Below, piece after piece: positions 12,501 to 60,834 of a stretch of DNA of 64,000 nt. The stretch is taken from NCBI RefSeq assembly GCF_046119375.1, contig NW_027362776.1:6758001-6822000 (forward strand), given 5' to 3'. Under the pieces are notes generated by a model. That model worked only from the letters and a program-made list of their open reading frames with translations. It was not told the origin of the DNA and did no database searches. How positions within the stretch are numbered: position 1 is the first letter of the stretch; each line of letters begins with the position of its first letter. The translations under genes and the position numbers were made by a program. Origin of the DNA: Phyllobates terribilis. Its lineage: Eukaryota.

Positions 12501-12641
<141 letters not shown>

Positions 12642-12819: not shown

Positions 12820-13119
<300 letters not shown>

Positions 13120-13193
13120 TAAACCAAGGATTTGCCCAATTACAACTATTGTATGTCTTTGGATTTTCAGGAGTTATAGAGTACCACAATTTA

Positions 13194-13458
13194 CAGCCTC
13201 CTTCACATGTCCATGTTTGCAGTACTTTTCTTTCAGGGATGCCACACGAATAAGTTATAACCTATGCTGCTGTGCACATCTGTGTTTTTACACGGACTGT
13301 ATGTCCATCTAAACCACACAGACACATGTCCATTTTTTACCGGCATCACTGATGACAAGAGGGAATACAAGTCTCTTCATCCTTGTAAAACACGTACAGC
13401 ACACGGAGGGCATTCATGTACTGTACATGTTTAACATTGCAAAGTATAGGAGAAGCTT
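13194..13458. mobile_element. Left part of a Harbinger-like MITE running directly into the tandem array
   Basis: TTA|CAGCCTCCTTCACATGTCCATG resembles a GGC..TTCACAC TIR (compare 10237) with CpG-type decay. Internal GGATGCCACACG, TTTTACACGGAC and GGCATCACTGATGAC resemble the array monomer. Family identity is from pattern recall. Confidence 0.5.
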
Positions 13459-16400
13459 TGTCACACTGATCAGAACACTGATGGAATACTGCTGGCACAC
13501 TGATCACAACACTGCTGGCACACTGATCACAACACTGCTGGCACACTGATCACAACACTGCTGGCACACTGATCACAACACTGCTAGCACACTGATCACA
13601 ACACTGCTGGCACACTGATCACAACACTGCTGGCACACTGATCAGAACACTGCTGGCACATTGATCAGAACACTGCTGGCACATTGATCAGAACACTGCT
13701 GGCACATTGATCAGAACACTGCTGGCACACTGATCACAACACTGCTGGCACACTGATCACAACACTGCTGGCACACTGATCACAACACTGCTGGCACACT
13801 GATCACAACACTGCTGTCACACTGATCACAACACTGCTGTCACACTGATCACAACACTGCTGTCACACTGATCACAACACTGCTGTCACACTGATCACAA
13901 CACTGCTGGCACACTGATCACAACACTGCTGGCACACTGATCACAACACTGCTGGCACACTGATCACAACACTGCTAGCACATTGATCAGAACACTGCTG
14001 GCACACTGATCAGAACACTGCTGGCACACTGATCAGAACACTGCTGGCACACTGATCAGAACACTGATCAGAACATTGATGACACACTGATCAGAACACT
14101 ACTGGCACACTGATCAGAGCACTGCTAGCACACTGATCAGAACAATGCTGGCACACTGATCAGAATACTGCTGGCACACTGATCAGAATACTGCTGGCAC
14201 ACTGATCAGAATACTGCTGGCACACTGATCAGAACACTGATCAGAACATTGATGACACACTGATCAGAACACTACTGGCACACTGATCAGAACACTGATC
14301 AGAACATTGATGGCACACTGATCAGAACATTGATGGCACACTGATCCGAATACTGCTGGCACACTGATCCGAATACTGCTGGCACACTGATCCGAATACT
14401 GCTGGCACACTGATCCGAATACTGCTGGCACACTGATCAGAACACTGATCAGAACATACATGGCACACTAATCAGAACACTGCTGGCACACTGATCCGAA
14501 TACTGCTGGCACACTGATCAGAACACTGATCAGAACATAGATGGCACACTGATCAGAATACTGCTAGCACACTGATCAGAACACTGCTGGCACACTGATC
14601 AGAACACTGCTGGCACACTGATCAGAACACTGCTGGCACACTGATCAGAACATTGATGATACACTGATCAGAACACTGCTGGCACACTGATCAGAACACT
14701 GATCAGAACATAGATGGCACACTGATCCGAATACTGCTGGCACACTGATCCGAATACTGCTGGCACACTGATCAGAATACTGCTGGCACACTGATCAGAA
14801 CATAGATGGCACACTGATCAGAATACTGCTGGCACACTGATCAGAACATTGATGGCACACTGATCAGAACACTGCTGGCACACTGATCAGAATACTGCTG
14901 GCACACTGATCAGAATACTGCTGGCACACTGATCAGAACATACATGGCACACTGATCAGAACATTGATGGCACACTAATCAGAACACTGCTGGCACACTG
15001 ATCAGAATACTGCTGGCACACTGATCCGAATACTGCTGGCACACTGATCCGAATACTGCTGGCACACTGATCCGAATACTGCTGTCACACTGACCAGAAC
15101 ACTGCTGTCACACTGACCAGAACACTGCTGTCACACTGACCAGAACACTGCTGTCACACTGACCAGAACACTGCTGTCACACTGACCAGAACACTGCTGT
15201 CACACTGACCAGAACACTGCTGTCACACTGACCAGAACACTGCTGTCACACTGACCAGAATACTGCTGTCACACTGACCAGAATACTGCTGGCACACTGA
15301 TCCGAATACTGCTGGCACACTGATCCGAATACTGCTGGCACACTGATCCGAATACTGCTGGCACACTGATCCGAATACTGCTGGCACACTGATCAGAACA
15401 CTGATCAGAACATAGATGGCACACTAATCAGAACACTGCTGGCACACTGATCCGAATACTGCTGGCACACTGATCCGAATACTGCTGGCACACTGATCCG
15501 AATACTGCTGGCACACTGATCCGAATACTGCTGGCACACTGATCCGAATACTGCTGGCACACTGATCCGAATACTGCTGGCACACTGATCAGAACACTGA
15601 TCAGAACACTGCTGGCACACTGATCCGAATACTGCTGGCACACTGATCCGAATACTGCTGGCACACTGATCAGAATACTGCTGGCACACTGATCAGAACA
15701 CTGATCAGAACATAGATGGCACACTGATCAGAATACTGCTGGCACACTGATCAGAACATTGATGGCACACTGATCAGAACACTGCTGGCACACTGATCAG
15801 AATACTGCTGGCACACTGATCAGAACATTGCTGGCACACTGATCAGAACATACATGGCACACTGATCAGAATACTGCTGGCACACTGATCAGAACATTGA
15901 TGGCACACTAATCAGAACACTGCTGGCACACTGATCAGAATACTGCTGGCACACTGATCAGAACATTGATGATACACTGATCAGAACACTGCTGGCACAC
16001 TGATCAGCACACTGCTGGCACACTGATCAGAACACTGCTGGCACACTGATCAGAACACTGCTGGCACACTGATCAGAACACTGCTGGCACACTGATCAGA
16101 ACACTGCTGGCACACTGATGGCACACTGATCAGAACACTGCTGGCACACTGAACAGAATACTGCTGGCACACTGATCAAAACATTGATGGCACACTGATC
16201 AGAACATTGATGGCACACTGATCAGAACATTGATGGCACACTAATCAGAACACTGCTGGCACACTGATCAGAATACTGCTGGCACACTGATCAGAACATT
16301 GATGATACACTGATCAGAACACTGCTGGCACACTGATCAGAACACTGCTGGCACACTGATCAGAACACTGCTGGCACACTGATCAGAACACTGCTGGCAC

Positions 16401-19400
16401 ACTGATCAGAACACTGCTGGCACACTGATCAGAACACTGCTGGCACACTGATCAGAACACTGCTGGCACACTGATCAGAACACTGCTGGCACACTGATCA
16501 GAACACTGCTGGCACACTGATCGGCACACTGCTGGCACACTGATCGGCACACTGCTGGCACACTGATCAGAACACTGCTGGCACACTGAACAGAATACTG
16601 CTGGCACACTGATCAGAACATTGATGGCACACTGATCAGAACATTGATGGCACACTGATCAAAACATGGATGGCACACTAATCAGAACACTGCTAGCACA
16701 CTGATCAGAACACTGATCAGAGCACTGCTGGCACACTGATCAGAACACTGCTGGCACACTGATCAGAACACTGCTGGCACACTGATCAGAACACTGCTGG
16801 CACACTGATCAGAACACTGATGGTATTCTGCTGGCACACTGATCAGAACACTGCTGGCACACTGATCAGAACACTGCTGGCACACTGATCAGAACACTGC
16901 TGGCACACTGATCAGAACACTGCTGGCACACTGATCAGACTACTGCTGGCACACTGATCAGAACACTAACCGGAACATTGATGGCACAATGATCAGAACA
17001 CTGCTGGCACACTGATCAGAACACTACTGGCACACTGATCAGAACACTACTGGCACACTGATCAGAACACTGATCAGAAGACTTCTGGCACACTGATCAG
17101 AACACTACTGGCACACTGATGGCACAATGATCGGAACTCTGGCACGCTGCTAGCACACTGATCAGAACACTGCTGGCACACTGATCAGAACACTGCTGGC
17201 ACACTGATCAGAACACTGATCGGCACACTGATCAAAACACTGATCAGAACACTGATGGCACACTGATCGGAACACTGCTGGCACACTGATCAGAACACTA
17301 CTGGCACACTGATCAGGACACTACTGGCACACTGATCAGGACACTACTGGCACACTGATCAGGACACTACTGGCACACTGATGGCACAATGATCGGAACT
17401 CTGGCACGCTGCTAGCACATTGATCAGAACACTGATGACACACTGATCAAAACACTGATCAGAACACTGATGACACACTGATGGGATCACTGATGGCACA
17501 CTGATGGGATCACTGCTGGCAAACTGATCAAAACACTGATCAGAACTCTGACAGCACACTGATCAGAAGACTTCTGGCACACTGATCAGAACACTACTGG
17601 CACACTGATCAGGACACTCATGGCACACTGATCAGAACACTGCTGGCACACTGATCAGAACACTGATCAGAAGACTTCTGGCACACTGATCAGAACACTA
17701 CTGGCACACTGATGGCACAATGATCGGAACTCTGGCACGCTGCTAGCACACTGATCAGAACACTGCTGGCACACTGATCAGAACACTGCTGGCACACTGA
17801 TCAGAACACTGATGGCACACTGATCAAAACACTAATCAGAACACTGATGGCACACTGATTGGATCACTGCTGGCACACTGATCGGAACACTGCTGGCACA
17901 CTGATCAGAACACTACTGGCACACTGATCAGGACACTCATGGCACACTGATGGCACAATGATCGGAACTCTGGCACGCTGCTAGCACACTGATCAGAACA
18001 CTGATGGCACACTGATCAGAACACTGATGGCACAGTGATCAGAACACTGATGGCACACTGATCAAAACACTGATCAGAACACTGATGGGATCACTGATGG
18101 CACACTGATGGGATCACTGCTGGCAAACTGATCAAAACACTGATCAGAACTCTGACAGCACACTGATCAGAAGACTTCTGGCACACTGATCAGAACACTA
18201 CTGGCACACTGATCAGGACACTCATGGCACACTGATCAGAACACTGATGGCACACTGATGGGATCACTGCTGGCACACTGATGGGATCACTGCTGGCACA
18301 CTGATGGGATCACTGCTGGCACACTGATGGGATCACTGCTGGCACACTGATGGGATCACTGCTGGCACACTGATGGGATCACTGCTGGCACACTGATGGG
18401 ATCACTGCTGGCACACTGATGGGATCACTGCTGGCACACTGATGGGATCACTGCTGGCACACTGATGGGATCACTGCTGGCACACTGATGGGATCACTGC
18501 TGGCACACTGATGGGATCACTGCTGGCACACTGATGGGATCACTGCTGGCACACTGATGGGATCACTGCTGGCACACTGATGGGATCACTGCTGGCACAC
18601 TGATGGGATCACTGCTGGCACACTGATCGGAACACTGCTGGCACACTGATCGGAACACTGCTGGCACGCTGATCGGAACACTGCTGGCACGCTGATCGGA
18701 ACACTGCTGGCACGCTGATCGGAACACTGATCAGAACACTGATCAAAACACTGATCAGAACACTGCTGGCACACTGATCAAAACACTGATCAGGACACTG
18801 ATCAAAACACTGATGGCACACTGATCAGAACACTGCTGGGACACTGATCCGAACACTGATCAGAACACTGATGGTAAACTGCTGGCACACTTATCAGAAC
18901 ACTGATGGCACACTGATCAGAACACTGTTGGCACACTGATCAGAACACTGATGGAACACTGATCAGAACACTGCTGGCACACTGATCAGAACATGGATGG
19001 CACACTGATCAGAACACTGATCGTAACACTGATCAGAACACTGATCGGAACACTGATGGCACATTGATCAGAACACTGCTGGCACACTAATCAGTACACT
19101 GATGGCACACTGATCAGAACACTGATGGCACACTGATCAGAACACTGATGGCACACTGATCAGAACACTGATCGGAACACTGATCAGAACACTGATCGGA
19201 ACACTGATGGCACACTGATCAGAACACTGATGGCACACTGATCAGAACACTACTGGCACACTGATCAGAACACTGCTGGCACACTGATCAGAGCACTGAT
19301 CAGAACACTGATGGCACACTGATCAGAACACTGATCAGAACATGGATGGCACACTGATCAGAACAGTGCTGGCACACTGATCAGAACACTACTGGCACAC

Positions 19401-22400
19401 TGATGGAACACTGCTGGCACACTGATGGGATCACTGCTGGCACACTGATGGGATCACTGCTGGCACACTGATGGGATCACTGCTGGCACACTGATGGGAT
19501 CACTGCTGGCACACTGATGGGATCACTGCTGGCACACTGATCGGAACACTGCTGGCACACTGATCGGAACACTGTTGGCACGCTGATCGGAACACTGTTG
19601 GCACGCTGATCGGAACACTGTTGGCACGCTGATCGGAACACTGTTGGCACGCTGATCGGAACACTGCTGGCACGCTGATCAGAACACTGCTGGCACGCTG
19701 ATCAGAACCCTGCTGGCACGCTGATCAGAACCCTGCTGGCACGCTGATCAGAACCCTGCTGGCACGCTGATCAGAACCCTGCTGGCACGCTGATCAGAAC
19801 CCTGCTGGCACGCTGATCAGAACCCTGCTGGCACACTGATCAGAACCCTGCTGGCACACTGATCAGAACCCTGCTGGCACACTGATCAGAACCCTGCTGG
19901 CACACTGATCAGAACCCTGCTGGCACACTGATCAAAACACTGATCAGGACACTGATCAAAACACTGATCAGAACACTGATCAAAACACTGATCAGAACAC
20001 TGCTGGCACACTGATCAAAACACTGATCAGCACACTGATCAAAACACTGATGGCACACTGATCAGAACACTGCTGGGACACTGATCCGAACACTGATCAG
20101 AACACTGATGGTAAACTGCTGGCACACTTATCAGAACACTGATGGCACACTGATCAAAACACTGATCAGAACACTGTTGGCACACTGATCAGAACACTGA
20201 TGGAACACTGATCAGAACACTGCTGGCACACTGATCAGAACATGGATGGCACACTGATCAGAACACTGATCAGAACACTGATCGGAACACTGATGGCACA
20301 TTGATCAGAACACTGCTGGCACACTAATCAGTACACTGATGGCACACTGATCAGAACACTGATGGCACACTGATCAGAACACTGCTGGCACACTAATCAG
20401 TACACTGATGGCACACTGATCAGAACACTGATGGCACACTGATCAGAACACTGATGGCACACTGATCAGAACACTGATCGTAACACTGATCAGAACACTG
20501 ATCGGAACACTGATGGCACACTAATCAGTACACTGATGGCACACTGATCAGAACACTACTGGCGCACTGATCAGAACACTGATGGCACACTGATCAGAAC
20601 ACTGATCAGAACATGGATGGCACACTGATCAGAACAGTGCTGGCACACTGATCAGAACACTACTGGCACAATGATGGAACACTGCTGGCACACTGATCAG
20701 AACACTGTTGGCATACTGATCAGAACATTGATGGCACACTGATCAGAACACTGCTGGCACACTGATCAGAACATGGATGGCACACTGATCAGAACACTGA
20801 TAATACACTGCTGGTACACTGATCAGAACACTGCTGGGACTCTGATCAGAACACTGATCAGAACACTGATGGTACACTGCTTGCACACTGATCAGAACAC
20901 TGATCAGAACACGGATGGCACACTGATCAGAACACTGATGGCACACGGATCAGAACACTGATGGCACACGGATCAAAACACTGATGGCACACTGATCAGA
21001 ACACTGCTGGGACACTGATCCGAACACTGATCAGAACACTGATGGTAAACTGCTGGCACACTTATCAGAACACTGATGGCACACTGATCAAAACACTGAT
21101 CAGAACACTGTTGGCACACTGATCAGAACACTGATGGAACACTGATCAGAACACTGCTGGCACACTGATCAGAACACTGCTGGCACACTGATCAGAACAC
21201 TGCTGGCACACTGATCAGAACACTGCTGGCACACTGATCAGAACACTGCTGGCACACTGACCAGAACACTGCTGGCACACTGACCAGAACACTGCTGGCA
21301 CACTGACCAGAACACTGCTGGCACACTGACCAGAACACTGCTGGCACACTGACCAGAACACTGCTGGCACACTGACCAGAACACTGCTGGCACACTGACC
21401 AGAACACTGCTGGCACACTGACCAGAACACTGCTGTCACACTGACCAGAACACTGCTGTCACACTGACCAGAACACTGCTGTCACACTGACCAGAACACT
21501 GCTGTCACACTGACCAGAACACTGCTGTCACACTGACCAGAACACTGCTGTCACACTGACCAGAACACTGCTGTCACACTGACCAGAACACTGCTGTCAC
21601 ACTGACCAGAACACTGCTGTCACACTGATCAAAACACTGTTGGCACACTGATCAGAACACTGCTGTCACACTGATCAAAACACTGATCAGAACACTGTTG
21701 GCACACTGATCAGAACACTGCTGGCACACTGATCAGAACACTGCTGGCACACTGATCAGAACACTGCTGGCACACTGATCAGAACACTGCTGGCACACTG
21801 ATCAGAACACTGTTGGCACACTGATCAGAACACTGCTGGCACACTGATCAGAACACTGCTGGCACACTGATCAGAACACTGCTGGCACATTGATCAGAAC
21901 ACTGCTGGCACACTGATCAGAACACTGCTGGCGCACTGATCAGAACACTGCTGGCGCACTGATCAGAACACTGCTGGCGCACTGATCAGAACACTGCTGG
22001 CGCACTGATCAGAACACTGCTGGCGCACTGATCAGAACACTGCTGGCACACTGATCAGAACACTGCTGGCACACTGATCAGAACACTGCTGGCACACTGA
22101 TCAGAACACTGCTGGCACACTGATCAGAACACTGCTGGCACACTGATCAGAACACTGCTGGCACACTGATCAGAACACTGCTGGCACACTGATCAGAACA
22201 CTGCTGGCACACTGATCAGAACACTGATCAGAACATGGATGGCACACTGATCAGAACAGTGCTGGCACACTGATCAGAACACTACTGGCACACTGATGGA
22301 ACACTGCTGGCACACTGATCAGAACACTGCTGTCACACTGATCAAAACACTGATCAGAACACTGTTGGCACACTGATCAGAACACTGCTGGCACACTGAT

Positions 22401-25400
22401 CAGAACACTGCTGGCACACTGATCAGAACACTGTTGGCACACTGATCAGAACACTGCTGGCACACTGATCAGAACACTGCTGGCACACTGATCAGAACAC
22501 TGCTGGCATATTGATCAGAACACTGCTGGCACACTGATCAGAACACTGCTGGCACACTGATCAGAACACTGCTGGCACACTGATCAGAACACTGCTGGCG
22601 CACTGATCAGAACACTGCTGGCGCACTGATCAGAACACTGCTGGCGCACTGATCAGAACACTGCTGGCGCACTGATCAGAACACTGCTGGCGCACTGATC
22701 AGAACACTGCTGGCGCACTGATCAGAACACTGCTGGCACACTGATCAGAACACTGCTGGCACACTGATCAGAACACTGCTGGCACACTGATCAGAACACT
22801 GCTGGCACACTGATCAGAACACTGCTGGCACACTGATCAGAACACTGCTGGCACACTGATCAGAACACTGCTGGCACACTGATCAGAACACTGCTGGCAC
22901 ACTGATCAGAACACTGCTGGCACACTGATCAGAACACTGCTGGCACACTGATCAGAACACTGATCAGAACATGGATGGCACACTGATCAGAACAGTGCTG
23001 GCACACTGATCAGAACACTACTGGCACACTGATGGAACACTGCTGGCACACTGATGAGAACACTGCTGGCGCACTGATCAGAACACTGCTGGCGCACTGA
23101 TCAGAACACTGCTGGCGCACTGATCAGAACACTGCTGGCACACTGATCAGAACACTGCTGGCACACTGATCAGAACACTGCTGGCACACTGATCAGAACA
23201 CTGCTGGCACACTGATCAGAACACTGCTGGCACACTGATCAGAACACTGCTGGCACACTGATCAGAACACTGCTGGCATGCTGGCACACTGATCAGAACA
23301 CTGATCAGATCATGGATGGCACACTGATCAGAACAGTGCTGGCACACTGATCAGAACACTGCTGGCACACTGATCAGAACACTGCTGGCACACTGATCAG
23401 AACACTGCTGGCACACTGATCAGAACACTGCTGGCACACTGATCAGAACACTGCTGGCATGCTGGCACACTGATCAGAACACTGATCAGATCATGGATGG
23501 CACACTGATCAGAACAGTGCTGGCACACTGATCAGAACACTACTGGCACACTGATGGAACACTGCTGGCACACTGATGAGAACACTGTTGGCACACTGAT
23601 GAGAACACTGTTGGCACACTGATCAGAACACTGCTGGCACACTGATCAGAACACTTCTGGCACACTGATCAGAACATTGATGGCATATTGATCAGAACAC
23701 TGCTGGCACACTGATCAGAACACTGCTGTCACACTGATCAAAACACTGTTGGCACACTGATCAGAACACTGCTGTCACACTGATCAAAACACTGATCAGA
23801 ACACTGTTGGCACACTGATCAGAACACTGCTGGCACACTGATCAGAACACTTCTGGCACACTGATCAGAACACTTATGGCACACTGATCAGAACATTGAT
23901 GGCATATTGATCAGAACACTGCTGGCACACTGATCAGAACACTGCTGGCACACTGATCAGAACACTGCTGGCACACTGATCAGAACACTGCTGGCGCACT
24001 GATCAGAACACTGCTGGCGCACTGATCAGAACACTGCTGGCGCACTGATCAGAACACTGCTGGCGCACTGATCAGAACACTGCTGGCACACTGATCAGAA
24101 CACTGCTGGCACACTGATCAGAACACTGCTGGCACACTGATCAGAACACTGCTGGCACACTGATCAGAACACTGCTGGCACACTGATCAGAACACTGCTG
24201 GCATGCTGGCACACTGATCAGAACACTGATCAGATCATGGATGGCACACTGATCAGAACAGTGCTGGCACACTGATCAGAACACTACTGGCACACTGATG
24301 GAACACTACTGGCACACTGATGGAACACTGCTGGCACACTGATCAGAACACTGCTGGCACACTGATCAGAACACTGATCAGAACACTGCTGGCACACTGA
24401 TCAGAACACTGCTGGCACACTGATCAGTACACTGCTGGCACACTGATCAGTACACTGCTGTCACACTGATCAGTACACTGCTGTCACACTGATCAGTACA
24501 CTGCTGTCACACTGATCAGTACACTGATGGCACACTGATCAGAACAGTGCTGGCACACTGATCAGAACACTGATCAGAACACTGCTGGCACACTGATCAG
24601 AACACTGATCAGAACACTGCTGGCACACTGATCAGAACACTGATCAGAACACTGCTGGCACACTGATCAGAACACTGATCAGAACACTGCTGGCACACTG
24701 ATCAGAACACTGCTGGCACACTGATCAGAACACTGCTGGCACACTGATCAGAACACTGCTGGCACACTGATCAGAACACTGCTGGCACACTGATGAGAAC
24801 ACTGTTGGCACACTGATGAGAACACTGTTGGCACACTGATGAGAACACTGTTGGCACACTGATCAAAACACTGATCAGAACACTGTTGGCACACTGATCA
24901 GAACACTGCTGGCACACTGATCAGAACACTTCTGGCACACTGATGAGAACACTGCTGTCACACTGATCAAAACACTGTTGGCACACTGATCAGAACACTG
25001 CTGTCACACTGATCAAAACACTGATCAGAACACTGTTGGCACACTGATCAGAACACTGCTGGCACACTGATCAGAACACTTCTGGCACACTGATCAGAAC
25101 ATTGATGGCATATTGATCAGAACACTGCTGGCACACTGATCAGAACACTGCTGGCACACTGATCAGAACACTGCTGGCGCACTGATCAGAACACTGCTGG
25201 CGCACTGATCAGAACACTGCTGGCGCACTGATCAGAACACTGCTGGCGCACTGATCAGAACACTGCTGGCACACTGATCAGAACACTGCTGGCACACTGA
25301 TCAGAACACTGCTGGCACACTGATCAGAACACTGCTGGCACACTGATCAGAACACTGCTGGCACACTGATCAGAACACTGCTGGCACACTGATCAGAACA

Positions 25401-28400
25401 CTGCTGGCACACTGATCAGAACACTGCTGGCACACTGATCAGAACACTGCTGGCACACTGATCAGAACACTGCTGGCACACTGATCAGAACACTGCTGGC
25501 ACACTGATCAGAACACTGCTGGCACACTGATCAGAACACTGCTGGCACACTGATCAGAACACTGCTGGCACACTGATCAGAACACTGCTGGCACACTGAT
25601 CAGAACACTGCTGGCACACTGATCAGAACACTGCTGGCACACTGATCAGAACATGGATGGCACACTGATCAGAACAGTGCTGGCACACTGATCAGAACAC
25701 TACTGGCACACTGATGGAACACTGCTGGCACACTGATGAGAACACTGTTGGCACACTGATGAGAACACTGTTGGCACACTGATCAGAACACTGTTGGCAC
25801 ACTGATCAGAACACTGCTGTCACACTGATCAAAACACTGATCAGAACACTGTTGGCACACTGATCACAACACTGCTGGCACACTGATCAGAACACTTCTG
25901 GCACACTGATCAGAACACTTCTGGCACACTGATCAGAACATTGATGGCATATTGATCAGAACACTGCTGGCACACTGATCAGAACACTGCTGGCACACTG
26001 ATCAGAACACTGCTGGCACACTGATCAGAACACTGCTGGCACACTGATCAGAACACTGCTGGCGCACTGATCAGAACACTGCTGGCACACTGATCAGAAC
26101 ACTGCTGGCACACTGATCAGAACACTGCTGGCACACTGATCAGAACACTGCTGGCACACTGATCAGAACACTGCTGGCACACTGATCAGAACACTGCTGG
26201 CACACTGATCAGAACACTGCTGGCACACTGATCAGAACACTGCTGGCACACTGATCAGAACACTGCTGGCACACTGATCAGAACACTGCTGGCACACTGA
26301 TCAGAACACTGCTGGCACACTGATCAGAACACTGCTGGCACACTGATCAGAACACTGATCAGAACATGGATGGCACACTGATCAGAACAGTGCTGGCACA
26401 CTGATCAGAACACTACTGGCACACTGATGGAACACTGCTGGCACACTGATCAGAACACTGCTGGCACACTGATCAGAACACTGCTGGCACACTGATCAGT
26501 ACACTGCTGTCACACTGATCAGTACACTGCTGTCACACTGATCAGTACACTGCTGTCACACTGATCAGTACACTGCTGTCACACTGATCAGTACACTGAT
26601 GGCACACTGATCAGAACAGTGCTGGCACACTGATCAGAACACTGATCAGAACACTGCTGGCACACTGATCAGAACACTGATCAGAACACTGCTGGCACAC
26701 TGATCAGAACACTGATCAGAACACTGCTGGCACACTGATCAGAACACTGATCAGAACACTGCTGGCACACTGATCAGAACACTGCTGGCACACTGATGAG
26801 AACACTGTTGGCACACTGATGAGAACACTGTTGGCACACTGATGAGAACACTGTTGGCACACTGATGAGAACACTGCTGGCACACTGATCAGAACACTGC
26901 TGGCACACTGATCAGAACACTTCTGGCACACTGATCAGAACATTGATGGCATATTGATCAGAACACTGCTGGCACACTGATCAGAACACTGCTGGCACAC
27001 TGATCAGAACACTGCTGGCACACTGATCAGAACACTGGCACACTGATCAGAACACTGATCAGAACATGGATGGCACACTGATCAGAACAGTGCTGGCACA
27101 CTGATCAGAACACTGCTGGCACACTGATCAGTACACTGCTGGCACACTGATCAGTACACTGCTGGCACACTGATCAGTACACTGCTGTCACACTGATCAG
27201 TACACTGCTGTCACACTGATCAGTACACTGATGGCACACTGATCAGAACAGTGCTGGCACACTGATCAGAACACTGATCAGAACACTGCTGGCACACTGA
27301 TGGGATCACTGCTGGCACACTGATGGGATCACTGCTGGCACACTGATGGGATCACTGCTGGCACGCTGATGGGATCACTGCTGGCACGCTGATCAGAACA
27401 CTGCTGGCACGCTGATCAGAACCCTGCTGGCACGCTGATCAGAACCCTGCTGGCACGCTGATCAGAACCCTGCTGGCACGCTGATCAGAACCCTGCTGGC
27501 ACGCTGATCAGAACCCTGCTGGCACACTGATCAGAACCCTGCTGGCACACTGATCAGAACCCTGCTGGCACACTGATCAGAACCCTGCTGGCACACTGAT
27601 CAGAACCCTGCTGGCACACTGATCAGAACCCTGCTGGCACACTGATCAGAACCCTGCTGGCACACTGATCAGAACCCTGCTGGCACACTGATCAAAACAC
27701 TGATCAGGACACTGATCAAAACACTGATCAGAACACTGATCAAAACACTGATCAGAACACTGCTGGCACACTGATCAAAACACTGATCAGGACACTGATC
27801 AAAACACTGATCAGAACACTGCTGGCACACTGATGAGAACACTGATGGCACACTGATCAGAACACTGATGGCACACGGATCAAATACTGATCAGAACACT
27901 GATGGCACACTGATCAGAATACTGATGGCACACTGATCTGAACACTGACACACTGATCAGAACACTGATGGCACACTGATCAGAACACTGATCAGAACAC
28001 TGATGGCACACTGATCAAAACACTAATGGCACACTGATCAGAACAATGATGGCACACTGATCAGAACACTGATGGCACACTGATCAGAACACTGCTGGCA
28101 CACTGATCAGAACACTGCTGGCACACTGACCAGAACACTGCTGGCACACTGATCAGAACACTGCTGGCACACTGACCAGAACACTGCTGGCACACTGACC
28201 AGAACACTGCTGGCACACTGACCAGAACACTGCTGGCACACTGACCAGAACACTGCTGGCACACTGACCAGAACACTGCTGGCACACTGACCAGAACACT
28301 GCTGTCACACTGACCAGAACACTGCTGTCACACTGACCAGAACACTGCTGTCACACTGACCAGAACACTGCTGTCACACTGACCAGAACACTGCTGTCAC

Positions 28401-31400
28401 ACTGACCAGAACACTGCTGTCACACTGACCAGAACACTGCTGGCACACTGATCAGAACATGGATGGCACACTGATCAGAACACTGATCGTAACACTGATC
28501 AGAACACTGATCGGAACACTGATGGCACATTGATCAGAACACTGATGGCACACTAATCAGTACACTGATGGCACACTGATCAGAACACTGATGGCACACT
28601 GATCAGAACACTACTGGCACACTGATCAGAACACTACTGGCACACTGATCAGAACACTGCTGGCACACTGATCAGAGCACTGATCAGAACACTGATGGCA
28701 CACTGATCAGAACACTGATCAGAACATGGATGGCACACTGATCAGAACAGTGCTGGCACACTGATCAGAACACTACTGGCACACTGATGGAACACTGCTG
28801 GCACACTGATCAGAACACTGTTGGCATACTGATCAGAACATTGATGGCACACTGATCAGAACACTGCTGGCACACTGATCAGAACACTGATCAGAACATG
28901 GATGGCACACTGATCAGAACACTGATAATACACTGCTGGTACACTGATCAGAACACTGCTGGGACTCTGATCACAACACTGATCAGAACACTGATGGTAC
29001 ACTGCTTGCACACTGATCAGAACACTGATCAGAACACGGATGGCACACTGATCAGAACACGGATGGCACACTGATCAGAACACGGATGGCACACTGATCA
29101 GAACACTGATGGCACACGGATCAGAACACTGATGGCACACGGATCAGAACACTGATGGCACACGGATCAGAACACTGATGGCACACTGATCAGAACACTG
29201 CTGGGACACTGATCCGAACACTGATCAGAACACTGATGGCACACTGATCAGAACGCTGATGGTAAACTGCTGGCACACTTATCAGAAAACTGATGGCACA
29301 CTGATCAAAACACTGATCAGAACACTGTTGGCACACTGATCAGAACACTGCTGGCACACTGATCAGAACACTGCTGGCACACTGATCAGAACACTGCTGG
29401 CACACTGACCAGAACACTGTTGGCACACTGATGAGAACACTGTTGGCACACTGATGAGAACACTGTTGGCACACTGATCAGAACACTGCTGGCACACTGA
29501 TCAGAACACTTCTGGCACACTGATCAGAACATTGATGGCATATTGATCAGAACACTGCTGGCACACTGATCAGAACACTGCTGTCACACTGATCAAAACA
29601 CTGATCAGAACACTGTTGGCACACTGATCAGAACACTGCTGGCACACTGATCAGAACACTTCTGGCACATTGATCAGAACACTTCTGGCACACTGATCAG
29701 AACATTGATGGCATATTGATCAGAACACTGCTGGCACACTGATCAGAACACTGCTGGCACACTGATCAGAACACTGCTGGCACACTGATCAGAACACTGC
29801 TGGCGCACTGATCAGAACACTGCTGGCGCACTGATCAGAACACTGCTGGCACACTGATCAGAACACTGCTGGCACACTGATCAGAACACTGCTGGCACAC
29901 TGATCAGAACACTGCTGGCACACTGATCAGAACACTGCTGGCACACTGATCAGAACACTGCTGGCACACTGATCAGAACACTGCTGGCACACTGATCAGA
30001 ACACTGCTGGCACACTGATCAGAACACTGCTGGCACACTGATCAGTACACTGCTGTCACACTGATCAGTACACTGATGGCACACTGATCAGTACACTGCT
30101 GTCACACTGATCAGTACACTGATGGCACACTGATCAGAACAGTGCTGGCACACTGATCAGAACACTGATCAGAACACTGCTGGCACACTGATCAGAACAC
30201 TGCTGGCACACTGATCAGAACACTGCTGGCACACTGATCAGAACACTGCTGGCACACTGATCAGAACACTGCTGGCACACTGATCAGAACACTGCTGGCA
30301 CACTGATCAGAACACTGGCACACTGATCAGAACACTGATCAGAACATGGATGGCACACTGATCAGAACAGTGCTGGCACACTGATCAGAACACTGCTGGC
30401 ACACTGATCAGAACACTGTTGGCATACTGATCAGAACATTGATGGCACACTGATCAGAACACTGCTGGCACACTGATCAGAACACTGATCAGAACATGGA
30501 TGGCACACTGATCAGAACACTGATAATACACTGCTGGTACACTGATCAGAACACTGCTGGGACTCTGATCAGAACACTGATCAGAACACTGATGGTACAC
30601 TGCTTGCACACTGATCAGAACACTGATCAGAACACGGATGGCACACGGATCAAAACACTGATGGCACACTGATCAGAACACTGCTGGGACACTGATCCGA
30701 ACACTGATCAGAACACTGATGGCACACTGATCAGAACACTGATGGTAAACTGCTGGCACACTTATCAGAACACTGATGGCACACTGATCAGAACACTGTT
30801 GGCACACTGATCAGAACACTGCTGGCACACTGATCAGAACACTGCTGGCACACTGATCAGAACACTGATCAGAACACTGCTGGCACACTGATCAGAACAC
30901 TGATCAGAACACTGCTGGCACACTGATCAGAACACTGCTGGCACACTGATCAGAACACTGCTGGCACACTGATCAGAACACTGCTGGCACACTGATCAGA
31001 ACACTGGCACACTGATCAGAACACTGATCAGAACATGGATGGCACACTGATCAGAACAGTGCTGGCACACTGATCAGAACACTACTGGCACACTGATGGA
31101 ACACTGCTGGCATACTGATCAGAACATTGATGGCACACTGATCAGAACACTGCTGGCACACTGATCAGAACACTGATCAGAACATGGATGGCACACTGAT
31201 AAGAACACTGATAATACACTGCTGGGACTCTGATCAGAACACTGATCAGAACACTGATGGTACACTGCTTGCACACTGATCAGAACACTGATCAGAACAC
31301 GGATGGCACACTGATCAGAACACTGATGGCACACGGATCAGAACACTGATGGCACACGGATCAAAACACTGATGGCACACTGATCAGAACACTGCTGGGA

Positions 31401-34400
31401 CACTGATCCGAACACTGATCAGAACACTGATGGCACACTGATCAGAACACTGATGGTAAACTGCTGGCACACTTATCAGAACACTGATGGCACACTGATC
31501 AGAACACTGTTGGCACACTGATCAGAACACTGTTGGCACACTGATCAGAACACTGCTGGCACACTGATCAGAACACTGCTGGCACACTGATGAGAACACT
31601 GTTGGCACACTGATGAGAACACTGTTGGCACACTGATGAGAACACTGTTGGCACACTGATGAGAACACTGTTGGCACACTGATCAGAACACTGCTGTCAC
31701 ACTGATCAAAACACTGATCAGAACACTGTTGGCACCCTGATCAGAACACTGTTGGCACCCTGATCAGAACACTGCTGGCACACTGATCAGAACACTTCTG
31801 GCACACTGATCAGAACACTTCTGGCACACTGATCAGAACATTGATGGCATATTGATCAGAACACTGCTGGCACACTGATCAGAACACTGCTGGCACACTG
31901 ATCAGAACACTGCTGGCACACTGATCAGAACACTGCTGGCACACTGATCAGAACACTGCTGGCGCACTGATCAGAACACTGCTGGCGCACTGATCAGAAC
32001 ACTGCTGGCACACTGATCAGAACACTGCTGGCACACTGATCAGAACACTGCTGGCACACTGATCAGAACACTGCTGGCACACTGATCAGAACACTGCTGG
32101 CACACTGATCAGAACACTGCTGGCATACTGATCAGAACACTGCTGGCACACTGATCAGAACACTGCTGGCACACTGATCAGAACACTGATCAGAACATGG
32201 ATGGCACACTGATCAGAACAGTGCTGGCACACTGATGGAACACTGCTGGCACACTGATCAGAACACTGCTGGCACACTGATCAGAACACTGATCAGAACA
32301 CTGCTGGCACACTGATCAGAACACTGCTGGCACACTGATCAGTACACTGCTGTCACACTGATCAGTACACTGCTGTCACACTGATCAGTACACTGATGGC
32401 ACACTGATCAGTACACTGCTGTCACACTGATCAGTACACTGATGGCACACTGATCAGAACAGTGCTGGCACACTGATCAGAACACTGATCAGAACACTGC
32501 TGGCACACTGATCAGAACACTGATCAGAACACTGCTGGCACACTGATCAGAACACTGATCAGAACACTGCTGGCACACTGATCAGAACACTGATCAGAAC
32601 ACTGCTGGCACACTGATCAGAACACTGATCAGAACACTGCTGGCACACTGATCAGAACACTGCTGGCACACTGATCAGAACACTGCTGGCACACTGATCA
32701 GAACACTGCTGGCACACTGATCAGAACACTGGCACACTGATCAGAACACTGATCAGAACATGGATGGCACACTGATCAGAACAGTGCTGGCACACTGATC
32801 AGAACACTACTGGCACACTGATGGAACACTGCTGGCACACTGATCAGAACACTGCTGGCACACTGATCAGAACACTGATCAGAACACTGCTGGCACACTG
32901 ATCAGAACACTGCTGGCACACTGATCAGAACACTGCTGGCACACTGATCAGAACACTGCTGGCACACTGATCAGTACACTGCTGGCACACTGATCAGTAC
33001 ACTGCTGGCACACTGATCAGTACACTGCTGTCACACTGATGAGTACACTGCTGTCACACTGATCAGTACACTGCTGTCACACTGATCAGTACACTGATGG
33101 CACACTGATCAGAACACTGCTGGCACACTGATCAGAACACTGATGAGAACACTGTTGGCACACTGATCAGAACACTGCTGGCACACTGATCAGAACACTG
33201 CTGGCACACTGATCAGAACACTGCTGTCACACTGATCAAAACACTGATCAGAACACTGTTGGCACACTGATCAGAACACTGCTGTCACACTCATCAAAAC
33301 ACTGATCAGAACACTGTTGGCACACTGATCAGAACACTGTTGGCACACTGATCAGAACACTGCTGGCACACTGATCAGAACACTTCTGGCACACTGATCA
33401 GAACACTGCTGGCATATTGATCAGAACACTGCTGGCACACTGATCAGAACACTGCTGGCACACTGATCAGAACACTAATGGCACACTGATCAGAACACTA
33501 ATGGCACACTGATCAGAACACTGATGGCACACTGATCAGAACACTAATGGCACACTGATCAGAACACTGATCAGAACACTGATGGCACACTGATCAGAAC
33601 ACTGCTGGGACACTGATCAGAACACTGATCAGAACACTGATCAGAACACTGATCAGAACACTGATCAGAACACTGATGGTACGCTGCTGGCACACTGATC
33701 AGAACACTGATGGCACACTGATCAGAGCACTGATCAGAACACTGATCAGAACACTGATGGCACACTGATCAGAGCACTGTTCAGAACACTGTTCAGAACA
33801 CTGATGGCACACTGATCAGAGCACTGATCAGAACACTGTTCAGAACACTGATGGCACACTGATCAGAGCACTGCTGGGACACTGATCAGAACACTGATCA
33901 GAACACTGCTGGCACACTGATCGGAACACTGATGGCGCACTGATCAGAACACTGATGGTACGCTGCTGGCACACTGATCAGAACACTGATGGCACACTGA
34001 TCAGAACACTGATGGCACACTGATCAGAACACTGATGGCACACTGATCAGAACACTGGCACACTGATCAGAACACTGATGGCACACTGATCAGAACACTG
34101 ATGGCACACTGATCAGAACACTGATGGCACACTGATCAGAACACTGATGGCACACTGATCAGAACACTGATGGCACACTGATCAGAACACTGATGGCACA
34201 CTGATCAGAACACTGATGGCACACTGATCAGAACACTGATCAGAACACTGATGGCACACTGATCAGAACACTGATGGCACACTGATCAGAACACTGATCA
34301 GAACACTGATGGCACACTGATCAGATCACTGTTGGTACACTGCTGGCACACTGATCAGAACACTGATGGCACACTTATCAGAGCACTGATCAGAACACTG

Positions 34401-37400
34401 ATGGCACACTGATCAGAACACTGATGGCACACTGATCAGAACACTGATGGCACACTGATCAGAACATTGCTGGCACACTGATCAGAACATTGCTGGCACA
34501 CTGATCAGAACATTGATGGCACACTTATCAGAACACTGCTGGGACACTGATCAGAACACTGATCAGAACACTGATCAGAACACTGATCAGAACACTGATC
34601 AGAACACTGATCAGAACACTGATCAGAACACTGCTGGGACACTGATCAGAACACTGCTGGGACACTGATCAGAACACTGATCAGAACACTGATCAGAACA
34701 CTGATGGTACACTGCTGGCACACTGATCAGAACAATGATGGCACACTGATCAGAACACTGATGGCACACTGATCAGAACACTGTTGGCACACTGATCAGA
34801 ACACTGTTGGCACACTGATCAGAACACTATTGGCACACTGATCAGAACACTGCTGGCTCACTGATCAGAACACTGCTGGCTCACTGATCAGAATACTGAT
34901 GGCACACTGATCAGAACACTGATGGCACACTGATCAGAACACTGATCAGAACACTGATGGCACACTGATCAGAACACTGCTGGGACACTGATCAGAACAC
35001 TGATCAGAACACTGATCAGAACACTGATCAGAACACTGATGGTACGCTGCTGGCACACTGATCAGAACACTGATGGCACACTGATCAGGGCACTGATCAG
35101 AACACTGATCAGAACACTGATGGCACACTGATCAGAGCACTGATCAGAACACTGTTCAGAACACTGATGGCACACTGATCAGAGCACTGATCAGAACACT
35201 GTTCAGAACACTGATGGCACACTGATCAGAGCACTGCTGGGACACTGATCAGAACACTGATCAGAACACTGCTGGCACACTGATCGGAACACTGATGGCG
35301 CACTGATCAGAACACTGATGGTACGCTGCTGGCACACTGATTAGAACACTGATGGCACACTGATCAGAACACTGATGGCACACTGATCAGAACACTGATG
35401 GCACACTGATCAGAACACTGTTGTCACACTGATCAGAACACTGATGGCACACTGATCAGAACACTGATGGCACACTGATCAGAACACTGATCAGAACACT
35501 GATCAGAACACTGATCGGCACACTGATCAGAACACTGCTGGCACACTGATCAGAACACTGCTGGCACACTGATCAGAACACTGCTGGCACACTGATCAGA
35601 ACACTGCTGGCACACTGATCAGAACACTGCTGGCACACTGATCAGAACACTGCTGGCACATTGATCAGTACACTGCTGGCACACTGATCAGAACACTGCT
35701 GGCACACTGATCAGAACACTGCTGGCACACTGATCAGAACACTGCTGGCACACTGATCAGAACACTGCTGGCACACTGATCAGAACACTGATCATAACAC
35801 TAATGGCACACTGATCAGAACACTAATGGCACACTGATCAGAACACTGCTGGGACACTGATCAGAACACTGATCAGAACACTGATGGCACACTTATCAGA
35901 TCACTGTTGGTACACTGCTGGCACACTGATCAGAACACTGATCAGAACACTGATGGCACACTGATCAGAGCACTGATCAGAACACTGATCAGAACACTGA
36001 TGGCACACTGATCAGAACACTGATGGCACACTGATCAGAACACTGATCAGAACACTGATCAGAACACTGATGGCACACTGATCAGAACACTGATCAGAAC
36101 ACTGATGGTACGCTGCTGGCACACTTATCAGAACACTGATGGCACACTGATCAAAACACTGATCAGAACACTGCTGGGACACTGATCAGAACACTGATGG
36201 CACACTGATCAGAACATTGCTGGCACACTGATCAGAACACTGATGGCACACTGATCAGAACACTGATCAGAACACTGATCAGAACACTGATGGCACACTG
36301 ATCAGAACACTGATCAGAACACTGATGGTACGCTGCTGGCACACTTATCAGAACACTGATGGCACACTGATCAAAACACTGATCAGAACACTGCTGGGAC
36401 ACTGATCCGAACACTGATCAGAACACTGCTGGCACACTGATCAAAACACTGATCAGAACACTAATGTTACACTGCTGGCACACTGATCAGAACACTGATC
36501 AGAACACTGATGGCACACTGATCAGAACACTGATGGCACACTGATCAGAACACTGATGGCACACTGATCAGAACACTGATGGCACACTGATCAGAACACT
36601 GATGGCACACTGATCAGAACACTGATCAGAACACTGATGGCACACTGATCAGAACACTGATGGCACACTGATCAGAACACTGATGGCACACTGATCAGAA
36701 CACTGATGGCACACTGATCAGAACACTGATGGCACACTGATCAGAACACTGATGGCACACTGATCAGAACACTGATCAGAACACTGATGGCACACTGATC
36801 AGAACACTGATGGCACACTGATCAGAACACTGATCAGAACACTGATGGCACACTGATCAGATCACTGTTGGTACACTGCTGGCACACTGATCAGAACACT
36901 GATGGCACACTTATCAGAGCACTGATCAGAACACTGATGGCACACTGATCAGAACACTGATGGCACACTGATCAGAACACTGATGGCACACTGATCAGAA
37001 CATTGCTGGCACACTGATCAGAACATTGATGGCACACTTATCAGAACACTGCTGGGACACTGATCAGAACACTGATCAGAACACTGATCAGAACACTGAT
37101 CAGAACACTGATCAGAACACTGATCAGAACACTGCTGGGACACTGATCAGAACACTGATCAGAACACTGATGGTACACTGCTGGCACACTGATCAGAACA
37201 ATGATGGCACACTGATCAGAACACTGCTGGCACACTGATCAGAACACTGCTGGCACACTGATCAGAACACTGTTGGCACACTGATCAGAACACTATTGGC
37301 ACACTGATCAGAACACTGCTGGCTCACTGATCAGAACACTGCTGGCTCACTGATCAGAATACTGATGGCACACTGATCAGAACACTGATGGCACACTGAT

Positions 37401-40400
37401 CAGAACACTGATCAGAACACTGATGGCACACTGATCAGAACACTGCTAGGACACTGATCAGAACACTGATCAGAACACTGATCAGAACACTGATCAGAAC
37501 ACTGATCAGAACACTGATCAGAACACTGATCAGAACACTGATCAGAACACTGATGGTACGCTGCTGGCACACTGATCAGAACACTGATGGCAGACTGATC
37601 AGAGCACTGATCAGAACACTGATCAGAACACTGATGGCACACTGATCAGAGCACTGATCAGAACACTGTTCAGAACACTGATGGCACACTGATCAGAGCA
37701 CTGATCAGAACACTGTTCAGAACACTGATGGCACACTGATCAGAGCACTGCTGGGACACTGATCAGAACACTGATCAGAACACTGCTGGCACACTGATCG
37801 GAACACTGATGGCGCACTGATCAGAACACTGATGGTACACTGATCAGAACACTGCTGGCACACTGATCAGAACACTGCTGGCACACTGATCAGAACACTG
37901 CTGGCACACTGATCAGAACACTGATCATAACACTAATGGCACACTGATCAGAACACTAATGGCACACTGATCAGAACACTGCTGGGACACTGATCAGAAC
38001 ACTGATCAGAACACTGATGGCACACTTATCAGATCACTGTTGGTACACTGCTGGCACACTGATCAGAACACTGATGGCACACTGATCAGAACACTGATGG
38101 CACACTGATCAGAACACTGATGGCACACTGATCAGAACACTGTTGTCACACTGATCAGAACACTGATGGCACACTGATCAGAACACTGATGGCACACTGA
38201 TCAGAACACTGATGGCACACTGATCAGAACACTGATCAGAACACTGATCGGCACACTGATCAGAACACTGATGGCACACTGATCAGAACACAGATGGCAC
38301 ACTGATCAGAACACTGCTGGCACACTGATCAGAACACTGCTGGCACACTGATCAGAACACTGCTGGCACACTGATCAGAACACTGCTGGCACACTGATCA
38401 GAACACTGCTGGCACACTGATCAGAACACTGCTGGCACACTGATCAGAACACTGCTGGCACACTGATCAGAACACTGCTGGCACACTGATCAGAACACTG
38501 ATCATAACACTAATGGCACACTGATCAGAACACTAATGGCACACTGATCAGAACACTGCTGGGACACTGATCAGAACACTGATCAGAACACTGATGGCAC
38601 ACTTATCAGATCACTGTTGGTACACTGCTGGCACACTGATCAGAACACTGATGGCACACTGATCAGAGCACTGATCAGAACACTGATCAGAACACTGATG
38701 TCACACTGATCAGAACACTGATGTCACACTGATCAGAACACTGATGGCACACTGATCAGAACATTGCTGGCACACTGATCAGAACACTGATGGCACACTG
38801 ATCAGAACACTGATCAGAACACTGATGGTACGCTGCTGGCACACTTATCAGAACACTGATGGCACACTGATCAAAACACTGATCAGAACACTGCTGGGAC
38901 ACTGATCCGAACACTGATCAGAACACTGCTGGCACACTGATCAAAACACTGATCAGAACACTAATGTTACACTGCTGGCACACTGATCAGAACACTGATG
39001 GCACACTGATCAGAACACTGATGGCACACTGATCAGAACACTGATGGCACACTGATCAGAACACTGCTGGGACACTGATCAGAACACTGATCAGAACACT
39101 GATGGCACACTGATCAGATCACTGTTGGTACACTGCTGGCACACTGATCAGAACACTGATGGCACACTTATCAGAGCACTGATCAGAACACTGATGGCAC
39201 ACTGATCAGAACACTGATGGCACACTGATCAGAACACTGATGGCACACTGATCAGAACACTGATGGCACACTGATCAGAACATTGCTGGCACACTGATCA
39301 GAACATTGATGGCACACTTATCAGAACACTGATCAGAACACTGATCAGAACACTGATCAGAACACTGATCAGAACACTGATCAGAACACTGCTGGGACAC
39401 TGATCAGAACACTGATCAGAACACTGATGGTACACTGCTGGCACACTGATCAGAACAATGATGGCACACTGATCAGAACACTGATGGCACACTGATCAGA
39501 ACACTGTTGGCACACTGATCAGAACACTGTTGGCACACTGATCAGAACACTATTGGCACACTGATCAGAACACTGCTGGCTCACTGATCAGAACACTGCT
39601 GGCTCACTGATCAGAACACTGCTGGCTCACTGATCAGAACACTGCTGGCTCACTGATCAGAACACTGCTGGCTCACTGATCAGAATACTGATGGCACACT
39701 GATCAGAACACTAATGGTACACTGCTGGTACACTGCTAGCACGCTGATCAGAACACTGATCAGAACACTGATGGCACACTGATCAGAACACTGATCAGAA
39801 CACTGATCAGAACACTGTTCAGAACACTGTTCAGAACACTGATCAGAACACTGTTCAGAACACTGATGGCACACTGATCAGAGCACTGCTGGGACACTGA
39901 TCAGAACACTGATGGCACACTGATCGGAACACTGATGGCGCACTGATCAGAACACTGATGGTACACTGATGGTACACTGATGGCACACTGATCAGAACAC
40001 TGATGGCACACTGATCAGAACACTGATGGCACACTGATCAGAACACTGATGGCACACTGATCAGAACACTGATGGCACACTGATCAGAACACTGCTGGGA
40101 CACTGATCAGAACACTAATGGCACACTGATCAGAACACTAATGGCACACTGATCAGAACACTAATGGCACACTGATCAGAACACTAATGGCACACTGATC
40201 AGAACACTGATCAGAACACTGATCAGAACACTGATCAGAACACTGATCAGAACACTGATCAGAACACTGATGGTTCGCTGCTGGCACACTGATCAGAACA
40301 CTGATGGCACACTGATCAGAACACTGATCAGAACACTGATGGCACACTGATCAGAACACTGATGGCACACTGATCAGAACACTGATGGCACACTGATCAG

Positions 40401-43400: not shown

Positions 43401-44989
43401 GATGGCACACTGATCAGAGCACTGCTGGGACACTGATCAGAACACTGATCAGAACACTGCTGGCACACTGATCGGAACACTGATGGCGCACTGATCAGAA
43501 CACTGATGGTACGCTGCTGGCACACTGATCAGAACACTGATGGCACACTGATCAGAACACTGATGGCACACTGATCAGAACACTGATGGCACACTGATCA
43601 GAACACTGGCACACTGATCAGAACACTGATGGCACACTGATCAGAACACTGATGGCACACTGATCAGAACACTGATGGCACACTGATCAGAACACTGATG
43701 GCACACTGATCAGAACACTGATGGCACACTGATCAGAACACTGATGGCACACTGATCAGAACACTGATCAGAACACTGATCGGCACACTGATCAGAACAC
43801 TGATGGCACACTGATCAGAACACTGATGGCACACTGATCAGAACACTGATGGCACACTGATCAGAACACTGATGGCACACTGATCAGAACACTGATGGCA
43901 CACTGATCAGAACACTGATGGCACACTGATCAGAACACTGATCAGAACACTGATGGCACACTGATCAGAACACTGATGGCACACTGATCAGAACACTGAT
44001 CAGAACACTGATGGCACACTGATCAGATCACTGTTGGTACACTGCTGGCACACTGATCAGAACACTGATGGCACACTTATCAGAGCACTGATCAGAACAC
44101 TGATGGCACACTGATCAGAACACTGATGGCACACTGATCAGAACATTGCTGGCACACTGATCAGAACATTGATGGCACACTTATCAGAACACTGCTGGGA
44201 CACTGATCAGAACACTGATCAGAACACTGATCAGAACACTGATCAGAACACTGCTGGGACACTGATCAGAACACTGATCAGAACACTGATGGTACACTGC
44301 TGGCACACTGATCAGAATACTGATGGCACACTGATCAGAACACTGATGGCACACTGATCAGAACACTGATCAGAACACTGATGGCACACTGATCAGAACA
44401 CTGCTGGGACACTGATCAGAACACTGATCAGAACACTGATCAGAACACTGATGGTACGCTGCTGGCACACTGATCAGAGCACTGATCAGAACACTGATGG
44501 CACACTGATCAGAGCACTGATCAGAACACTGTTCAGAACACTGATGGCACACTGATCAGAGCACTGATCAGAACACTGTTCAGAACACTGATGGCACACT
44601 GATCAGAGCACTGCTGGGACACTGATCAGAACACTGATCAGAACACTGCTGGCACACTGATCGGAACACTGATGGCGCACTGATCAGAACACTGATGGTA
44701 CGCTGCTGGCACACTGATTAGAACACTGATGGCACACTGATCAGAACACTGATGGCACACTGATCAGAACACTGATGGCACACTGATCAGAACACTGCTG
44801 GCACACTGATCAGAACACTGCTGGCACACTGATCAGAACACTGCTGGCACACTGATCAGAACACTGCTGGCACACTGATCAGAACACTGCTGGCACACTG
44901 ATCAGAACACTGCTGGCACACTGATCAGAACACTGCTGGCACACTGATCAGAACACTGCTGGCACACTGATCAGAACACTGCTGGCACA

Positions 44990-60600: not shown

Positions 60601-60834
60601 CACTGATCAGAACACTGATGGCACACTTATCAGAACACTGATGGGACACTGATCAGAACACTGATGGCCCACTGATCAGAACACTGATCAGAACACTGAT
60701 GGTATGCTTCTGGCACACTTAACAGAACACTGATGGCACACTGATCAAAACACTGATCAGAACACTGCTGGGACACTGATCCGAACACTGATCAGAACAC
60801 TGCTGGCACACTGATCAAAACACTGATCAGAACA

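What the first reader, a model, noticed from the sequence alone, without database searches (positions are those of the whole stretch)
13191..13520. The array appears to have grown out of the interior of a Harbinger-like MITE
Seen: a TTA-flanked TIR-like start (CAGCCTCCTTCACATGTCCATG), ~265 nt of MITE-like sequence with proto-monomers (GGATGCCACACG, GGCATCACTGATGAC, GTCACACTGAT), then a seamless transition into the array. Inference: a short internal repeat of a mobile element underwent runaway expansion. If so, this MITE family is a mobile seed for satellites, and sister copies should carry arrays from a few units to tens of kb.
Basis: inference. Interest (0 to 1): 0.75.

Follow-up and report, generated by a model that had tools for sequence, protein, structure and literature searches.

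The report
Giant intron satellite, MITE origin unproven
A tandem repeat block of more than 50,000 bases fills an intron of a poison-frog uridine phosphorylase gene, but nothing I could test shows that it grew out of a small transposon: the supposed transposon has no second copy, no matching end, and its repeat-like "seeds" are no better than chance.

Summary
The quoted strings are at the stated coordinates. A pure satellite runs from 13463 to the window end (more than 50.5 kb, about 2,190 units of 23 nt, each a 12-nt ACACTGATCAGA plus an 11-nt ACACTG(A/C)TGGC). It starts 424 nt into the intron after a uridine phosphorylase exon (12880-13038, + strand).

The MITE reading could not be verified.
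- The window holds no second copy of 13194-13458.
- It holds no inverted partner of the "TIR", even at 3-5 mismatches.
- The "proto-monomers" share no more k-mers with the array than 13 kb of control flank does. A profile of the array finds nothing in the flank. One permissive alignment test is borderline (2 of 97 controls as good).
- TTA before CAG fits a Tc1-type TA site as well as a Harbinger TWA site.

One point favours an inserted element. An orthologous contig from another frog aligns at 84% from the exon to about 13170. Detectable homology then stops, about 20 nt before the proposed end.

The far end of the array lies outside the window. Verdict: real satellite, flank probably lineage-specific and perhaps transposon-derived, MITE origin open (about 15%). 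Transposon-seeded satellites are already known in Xenopus. This scan's earlier notes on other DNA of this genome report the same.

The parts
12509..12629 (+). Upstream coding exon of a uridine phosphorylase gene (AG acceptor at 12507-12508, GTGAG donor at 12630)
   Evidence: tblastn of uridine phosphorylase fragments hits 12522-12635. Splice sites read.
12880..13038 (+). Coding exon (53 codons, [14 protein letters not shown]...GPVLAIS) of the same gene, with GTAAGT donor at 13039
   Evidence: 90 protein hits, several named uridine phosphorylase 1 or carrying PF01048; tblastn; about 95% identical to L001 across the exon. Pfam alone gives nothing for so short a piece.
13039..13170 (+). Start of the intron, still alignable with the orthologous intron of another frog (L001)
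   Evidence: blastn gives 84% identity over window 12867-13170 against L001 210-515; alignments.
13171..13462 (.). Lineage-specific flank with no detectable homology to L001.
   Evidence: Homology with L001 beyond 13175 is at shuffle level (p 0.28-0.66). There is no other copy in the window. It has an internal motif CACATGTCCAT x2 and two copies of a near-palindromic 16-mer at 13390-13405 and 13415-13430.
13463..64000 (+). Satellite array, open-ended at the window edge. The 23-nt unit is ACACTGATCAGA (12 nt) plus ACACTG(A/C)TGGC (11 nt), about 2,190 units. It is pure, with no foreign insert and no N.
   Evidence: TRF period 23/46/69; motif spacing and gap inspection; subunit census; about 7.8-kb super-periodicity in the distal half; the proximal 8 kb is more variant-rich.

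Best explanation
This is an ordinary but very large intronic satellite. A short 11-12-nt motif became a 12+11 = 23-nt unit and was amplified in place by replication slippage and unequal exchange, to more than 50 kb. The structure shows amplification at several scales. There are runs of up to about 17 identical variant units. There are repeated blocks of about 7.8 kb in the distal half. The proximal edge is more variant-rich and less homogenised. The 290 nt to its left (13171-13462) is lineage-specific sequence, probably a decayed transposon fragment, as most of this genome is. It merely adjoins the array, and no sequence relation between it and the monomer is detectable. The structure, the purity, the gene context and the lack of similarity are shown directly. 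The amplification mechanism and the 'unrelated neighbour' status of the flank are inferred.
For: Array anatomy. Intron context on the sense strand of a uridine phosphorylase gene. No array-like sequence in the flank: common array k-mers occur in 13194-13455 at the same density as in 13 kb of control flank (one 9-mer hit against 0.42 expected), nhmmer with an array profile gives no hit there at E up to 100, and there is no 11/12/23 periodicity. No inverted partner of the proposed TIR in the window. No second copy of the flank. No relatives by translated search.
Against: The far end of the array was not seen, so a matching right half cannot be excluded. One permissive alignment of 13341-13439 to the array scores above 98% of controls. 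Homology with the other frog's intron breaks near the proposed terminus, as a transposon insertion predicts.
Confidence: 0.5

Rival explanations
1. One reading: 13194-13458 is the left half of a short non-autonomous DNA transposon (Harbinger-like or Tc1-like), and a short internal repeat of it expanded into the array. The right half and the second TIR would then lie beyond the window.
For: A discontinuity in orthologous homology lies about 20 nt before the proposed end. The flank has an internal repeated motif and a near-palindrome typical of such elements. The mechanism is documented in Xenopus (Xstir, miDNA4; review PMC12628747) and reported in earlier notes on this genome.
Against: No TIR partner, no second copy and no TSD pair can be seen. 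The quoted proto-monomers are at chance level. The only two-unit array-like stretch (13390-13411) is separated from the array by about 50 nt of unrelated sequence, is out of phase with it, and 9-of-11 matches of that kind are expected about three times by chance in 265 nt (my calculation). The homology break is at about 13170-13175, not at 13194.
Confidence: 0.15
2. The array is cargo of a larger transposon, for example a hAT- or Helitron-type element with internal tandem repeats. Its left terminus would lie at about 13171-13194, and the 270-nt flank would be its subterminal region, not a MITE.
For: The same homology break applies. Earlier notes on this genome describe hAT families that carry internal tandem repeats blown up to 16-21 kb. 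The CAG start is compatible with several DNA-transposon superfamilies (my knowledge).
Against: No transposase or other coding signal is visible (one search lists only short stop-free stretches; the one tested, 13261-13431, found no homologue). No terminus pair is seen. No other copy is available.
Confidence: 0.15
3. The array arose elsewhere and reached this intron by a rearrangement or by reintegration of extrachromosomal repeat DNA. The sharp left junction would be a breakpoint and the flank would be plain intron.
For: The junction is abrupt, with near-consensus units at the very edge and no decayed monomers in the flank.
Against: The proximal 8 kb is more variant-rich than the rest, as expected for a long-standing array edge. 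There is no evidence that this satellite exists at other loci (blank but uninformative).
Confidence: 0.1

Closest known systems
Xstir MITE-derived tandem repeats of Xenopus (Hikosaka and Kawahara 2004, as summarised in PMC12628747)
   Same: It is a frog genome with a tandem array next to a MITE-like sequence. The proposed origin of the monomers is internal MITE sequence.
   Different: In Xstir the MITE, the array and composite forms were all observed, and the monomers align to the MITE interior. Here no alignment above chance exists and no other copy was seen.
miDNA4, a Tc1/mariner MITE of Xenopus carrying a variable internal satellite (Scalvenzi and Pollet, summarised in PMC12628747)
   Same: TA|CAG-type start; the idea that copies carry from one monomer to long arrays, and that long arrays lose their ends.
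   Different: The copy-number series among sister copies defines miDNA4 and could not be examined here.
DTC84 tandem-repeat-containing MITE of the clam Donax trunculus (PMC3879986) and the Tetris foldback element of Drosophila virilis (PMC4079207)
   Same: These are transposons whose internal tandem repeats supply building blocks for satellite DNA.
   Different: Those elements have both termini and many copies documented. Their monomers are about 150-220 bp, not 23 nt.
Earlier notes of this scan on the same genome: hAT elements with 16-21 kb internal arrays, and an array grown from a hairpin-repeat arm
   Same: Same genome, same size class of array, same general claim.
   Different: Those follow-ups reported flanking parts of the source element on both sides, or sister copies. 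Here only one flank is visible and it shows no similarity to the monomer. I did not re-test those notes.

Membership tests
PIF/Harbinger-type MITE | Terminal inverted repeats at both ends | tested here: inconclusive
   No inverted match to 13194-13215 anywhere in the 64-kb window. Pairing with the 30 nt before the array is at chance (p 0.06). The expected partner would lie beyond the window.
PIF/Harbinger-type MITE | 3-bp TWA target-site duplication on both sides | tested here: inconclusive
Only the left TTA (13191-13193) is visible. The same letters also read as a TA site followed by CAG (Tc1/mariner style).
PIF/Harbinger-type MITE | Many dispersed copies in the genome | tested here: inconclusive
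   None in the window. The translated search was blank. The metagenome scan gave only a chance 22-nt hit in a 71% G+C bacterial contig. The findings index by sequence was blank (said to mean nothing).
Transposon-derived satellite (Xstir / miDNA4 type) | Monomer alignable to internal sequence of the element | tested here: not met
   K-mer sharing equals the control flank. The nhmmer array profile gives no hit in 13194-13462. No matching periodicity. Only a borderline permissive alignment.
Transposon-derived satellite (Xstir / miDNA4 type) | Composite copies with element ends on both sides of the array, and sister copies with few units | not testable with these tools
   The array runs off the window at 64000, and no access to other parts of this genome was available.
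Satellite DNA | Long head-to-tail array of a short unit, with runs of variants and higher-order periodicity | tested here: met
   More than 50.5 kb, period 23/46/69; variant runs; subunit census; about 7.8-kb super-period.

The most novel reading that the evidence does not exclude
13194-13458 really is the left half of a mobile MITE family of the golden poison frog that carries the 11/12-nt ACACTGAT repeat as internal cargo. Its copies would then seed arrays from a few units to more than 50 kb across the genome, including inside genes, and so contribute measurably to the gigantism of this genome.
Probability: 0.12. Interest if true: 0.45.

Novelty: new member of a known kind. Interest (0 to 1): 0.2.

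Why it matters
If the MITE origin held, it would add a poison-frog case to the known Xenopus, bivalve and Drosophila examples of transposons seeding satellites. It would also give a mobile explanation for how very large arrays get into gene introns of a giant genome. As it stands, the solid result is narrower. A satellite of more than 50 kb begins 424 nt after a splice donor of an apparently intact uridine phosphorylase gene and lies on its sense strand. This is a useful example of intron gigantism caused by a satellite. It could also serve to test whether such introns are still transcribed and spliced.

Tried and rejected
1. Search for the TIR or its reverse complement in the window with mismatches: only the original site.
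2. Direct and inverted repeat scan, and a word-7 blastn of 13191-13462 against the left 13 kb, against itself and against the array: nothing above chance.
3. Fold of the flank as single-stranded DNA: z -1.67, not foldback-like.
4. A short TIR between the two ends of the 270-nt flank, which would make it a complete element beside the array: p 0.06, rejected.
5. Decayed monomers in the flank: nhmmer, k-mers and autocorrelation are all negative. The two-unit stretch ACACGTACAGC ACACGGAGGGC (13390-13411) looked tempting as a CpG-decayed proto-dimer, but matches of that quality are expected by chance.
6. Apparent continuation of L001 homology across the 'TIR' in a permissive global alignment: not significant against shuffles.
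7. Translated search of a stop-free stretch of the flank, to catch spurious ORFs from sister copies: blank.
8. Metagenome scans for the satellite unit (blank) and for the TIR (one chance hit in a bacterial contig).
9. Rfam and tRNA scans of 12300-14300: nothing.
11. I ran no further search on a long-shot route to the annotated gene.
12. The spliced gene model was not joined; exons were searched separately by reference. The N run at 187-336 was left untouched.

Full report
**What is there**

Tandem Repeats Finder reports one array from 13463 to the end of the window, with periods 23, 46 and 69 and about 2,190 copies of the 23-nt unit.

The unit is a 12-nt subunit followed by an 11-nt subunit:
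- ACACTGATCAGA: 1,542 exact copies.
- ACACTGATGGC: 503 exact copies.
- ACACTGCTGGC: 477 exact copies.

Every stretch that lacks the core motif turned out to be a run of variant units, up to about 17 identical units in a row. There is no foreign insert and no N inside the array. The distal half carries repeated blocks about 7.8 kb apart. Exact consensus subunits cover 40-56% of the proximal 8 kb and 65-77% of the rest. The left edge is therefore the least homogenised part, which is usual for satellite arrays.

**Context**

The window's + strand carries two exons of a uridine phosphorylase gene, at about 12509-12629 and at 12880-13038, the latter with a GTAAGT donor at 13039. By my memory of the human sequences the residues look more UPP2-like. 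The database names say uridine phosphorylase 1. The array begins 424 nt into the following intron, on the sense strand. Earlier notes of this scan call this genome the golden poison frog. I did not verify the species.

**Is the flank a MITE?**

- *Copies and ends.* There is no second copy of 13194-13458 in the window, direct or inverted. The proposed TIR has no partner at up to 3 of 16 or 5 of 22 mismatches. Treating the 270 nt as a complete small element beside the array also fails, because the end-to-end inverted similarity has p about 0.06. The strand does not fold unusually well (z -1.67).
- *Internal repeats.* The flank contains CACATGTCCAT twice and ATGTCCAT three times, against one ATGTCCAT in 12.8 kb of control. 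It also holds two copies of a near-palindromic 16-mer at 13390-13405 and 13415-13430. This exceeds shuffles (p 0.007), but 18% of control windows in this transposon-rich region do as well.
- *Superfamily.* With one end only, no superfamily can be assigned. TTA followed by CAG fits a TWA Harbinger site no better than a TA site with a CAG-starting Tc1/mariner end (my knowledge of these families).

**An orthologous contig**

A protein-word search with the exon ORF found a 958-nt Logan contig from another frog (L001, run SRR32377442). It aligns with the window at 84% identity from the exon through the intron to about 13170. Beyond 13175 the similarity is indistinguishable from shuffles (p 0.28-0.66) under three scoring schemes. 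A permissive global alignment made the homology appear to run across the 'TIR', but that did not survive the shuffle test. So lineage-specific sequence starts at about 13171-13194 in one of the two lineages. An insertion there would produce this. The result does not say which lineage changed, what the insert is, or whether it is related to the array.

**Are there proto-monomers?**

| Test | Result |
|---|---|
| K-mers common in the array (20 or more copies) | 13194-13455 has one 9-mer hit; the control flank gives 21 hits in 13.2 kb, so 0.42 expected. No 10-mer or longer. |
| nhmmer profile of 300 three-unit pieces of the array | No hit in 13194-13462 at E up to 100; the six weak hits lie elsewhere. 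|
| Autocorrelation over 13194-13459 | No signal at lags 11, 12, 23 or 46. The last 80 nt shows z about 2-2.9 at lags 11, 44 and 45 among 47 lags tested. |
| Permissive Smith-Waterman against ten array samples | Score 18 against 12.7 +/- 2.2; 2 of 97 overlapping controls reach it. |

It lies 50 nt from the array and is out of phase with it. Matches of 9 of 11 are expected about three times by chance in 265 nt, both strands and all rotations counted (my calculation). I conclude that the proto-monomer argument is at chance level, with at most a weak hint.

**What could not be done**

- The far end of the array is outside the window.
- A translated search of the flank was blank.
- A metagenome scan for the satellite was blank. 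The scan for the TIR gave one 22-nt hit in a 71% G+C bacterial contig with no extension, which is a chance match.
- The findings index holds nothing for the adjoining DNA.

**Explanation and odds**

| Reading | Probability |
|---|---|
| Ordinary satellite amplified in place by slippage and unequal exchange; left neighbour is unrelated, lineage-specific, possibly transposon-derived sequence | 0.5 |
| Array is cargo of a larger transposon whose left terminus lies at 13171-13194 | 0.15 |
| Import of the array by rearrangement | 0.1 |

**Comparison with what is known**

Transposon interiors seeding satellites is established. Xstir and miDNA4 in Xenopus are both summarised in PMC12628747. Other cases are DTC84 in a clam (PMC3879986) and Tetris in Drosophila virilis (PMC4079207). 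Earlier notes of this scan report such cases on other DNA of this same genome. Even if the reading is true, this would be a new member of a known kind.

**Verdict**

- Observation: partly confirmed.
- Interpretation: cannot tell, and its one testable leg failed.
- Interest: low.

Noticed in passing
window 10234-10965: Two tandem copies (369-nt period, 88% identical) of a repeat that starts TAAGGCTG(A/T)GTTCACACG and is full of internal palindromes. It is a head-to-tail dimer of a MITE-like unit, i.e. a possible two-copy proto-satellite.
   Followed up: no
window 10963-11913: A second tandem duplication (spacing about 444-502 nt, 80-96% identical blocks) of a unit that contains a 23-nt perfect hairpin (11665-11687 / 11693-11715).
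   Followed up: no
window 4694-4923: A 114-nt inverted repeat, 93% complementary, with only 2 nt between the arms: a foldback or hairpin element.
   Followed up: no
window 33000-64000: The distal half of the satellite has a super-periodicity of about 7.8 kb: rare 60-mers recur at 7,773-7,899 nt. This points to segmental duplication inside the array.
   Followed up: partly
window 13463-64000: Copies of the commonest 12-nt subunit (ACACTGATCAGA) contain the 8-nt palindrome CTGATCAG, so the array carries well over a thousand copies of it. The + (sense) strand is strongly A- and C-rich (AT skew about +0.27, GC skew about -0.11).
   Followed up: no
window 540-633 and 5487-5580: A 94-nt inverted repeat, 85% complementary, with arms 4.85 kb apart. 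It probably marks the ends of the DIRS-type elements that other notes mention for this window.
   Followed up: no
L001 1-130: The other frog's contig carries, upstream of the exon, a piece of a typical anuran palindromic repeat (…CATTATAGTGAATGGGGTCCG…) that is absent from the window at that position.
   Followed up: no
This explains its exact 22-nt chance match in a 71% G+C metagenome contig.
   Followed up: yes
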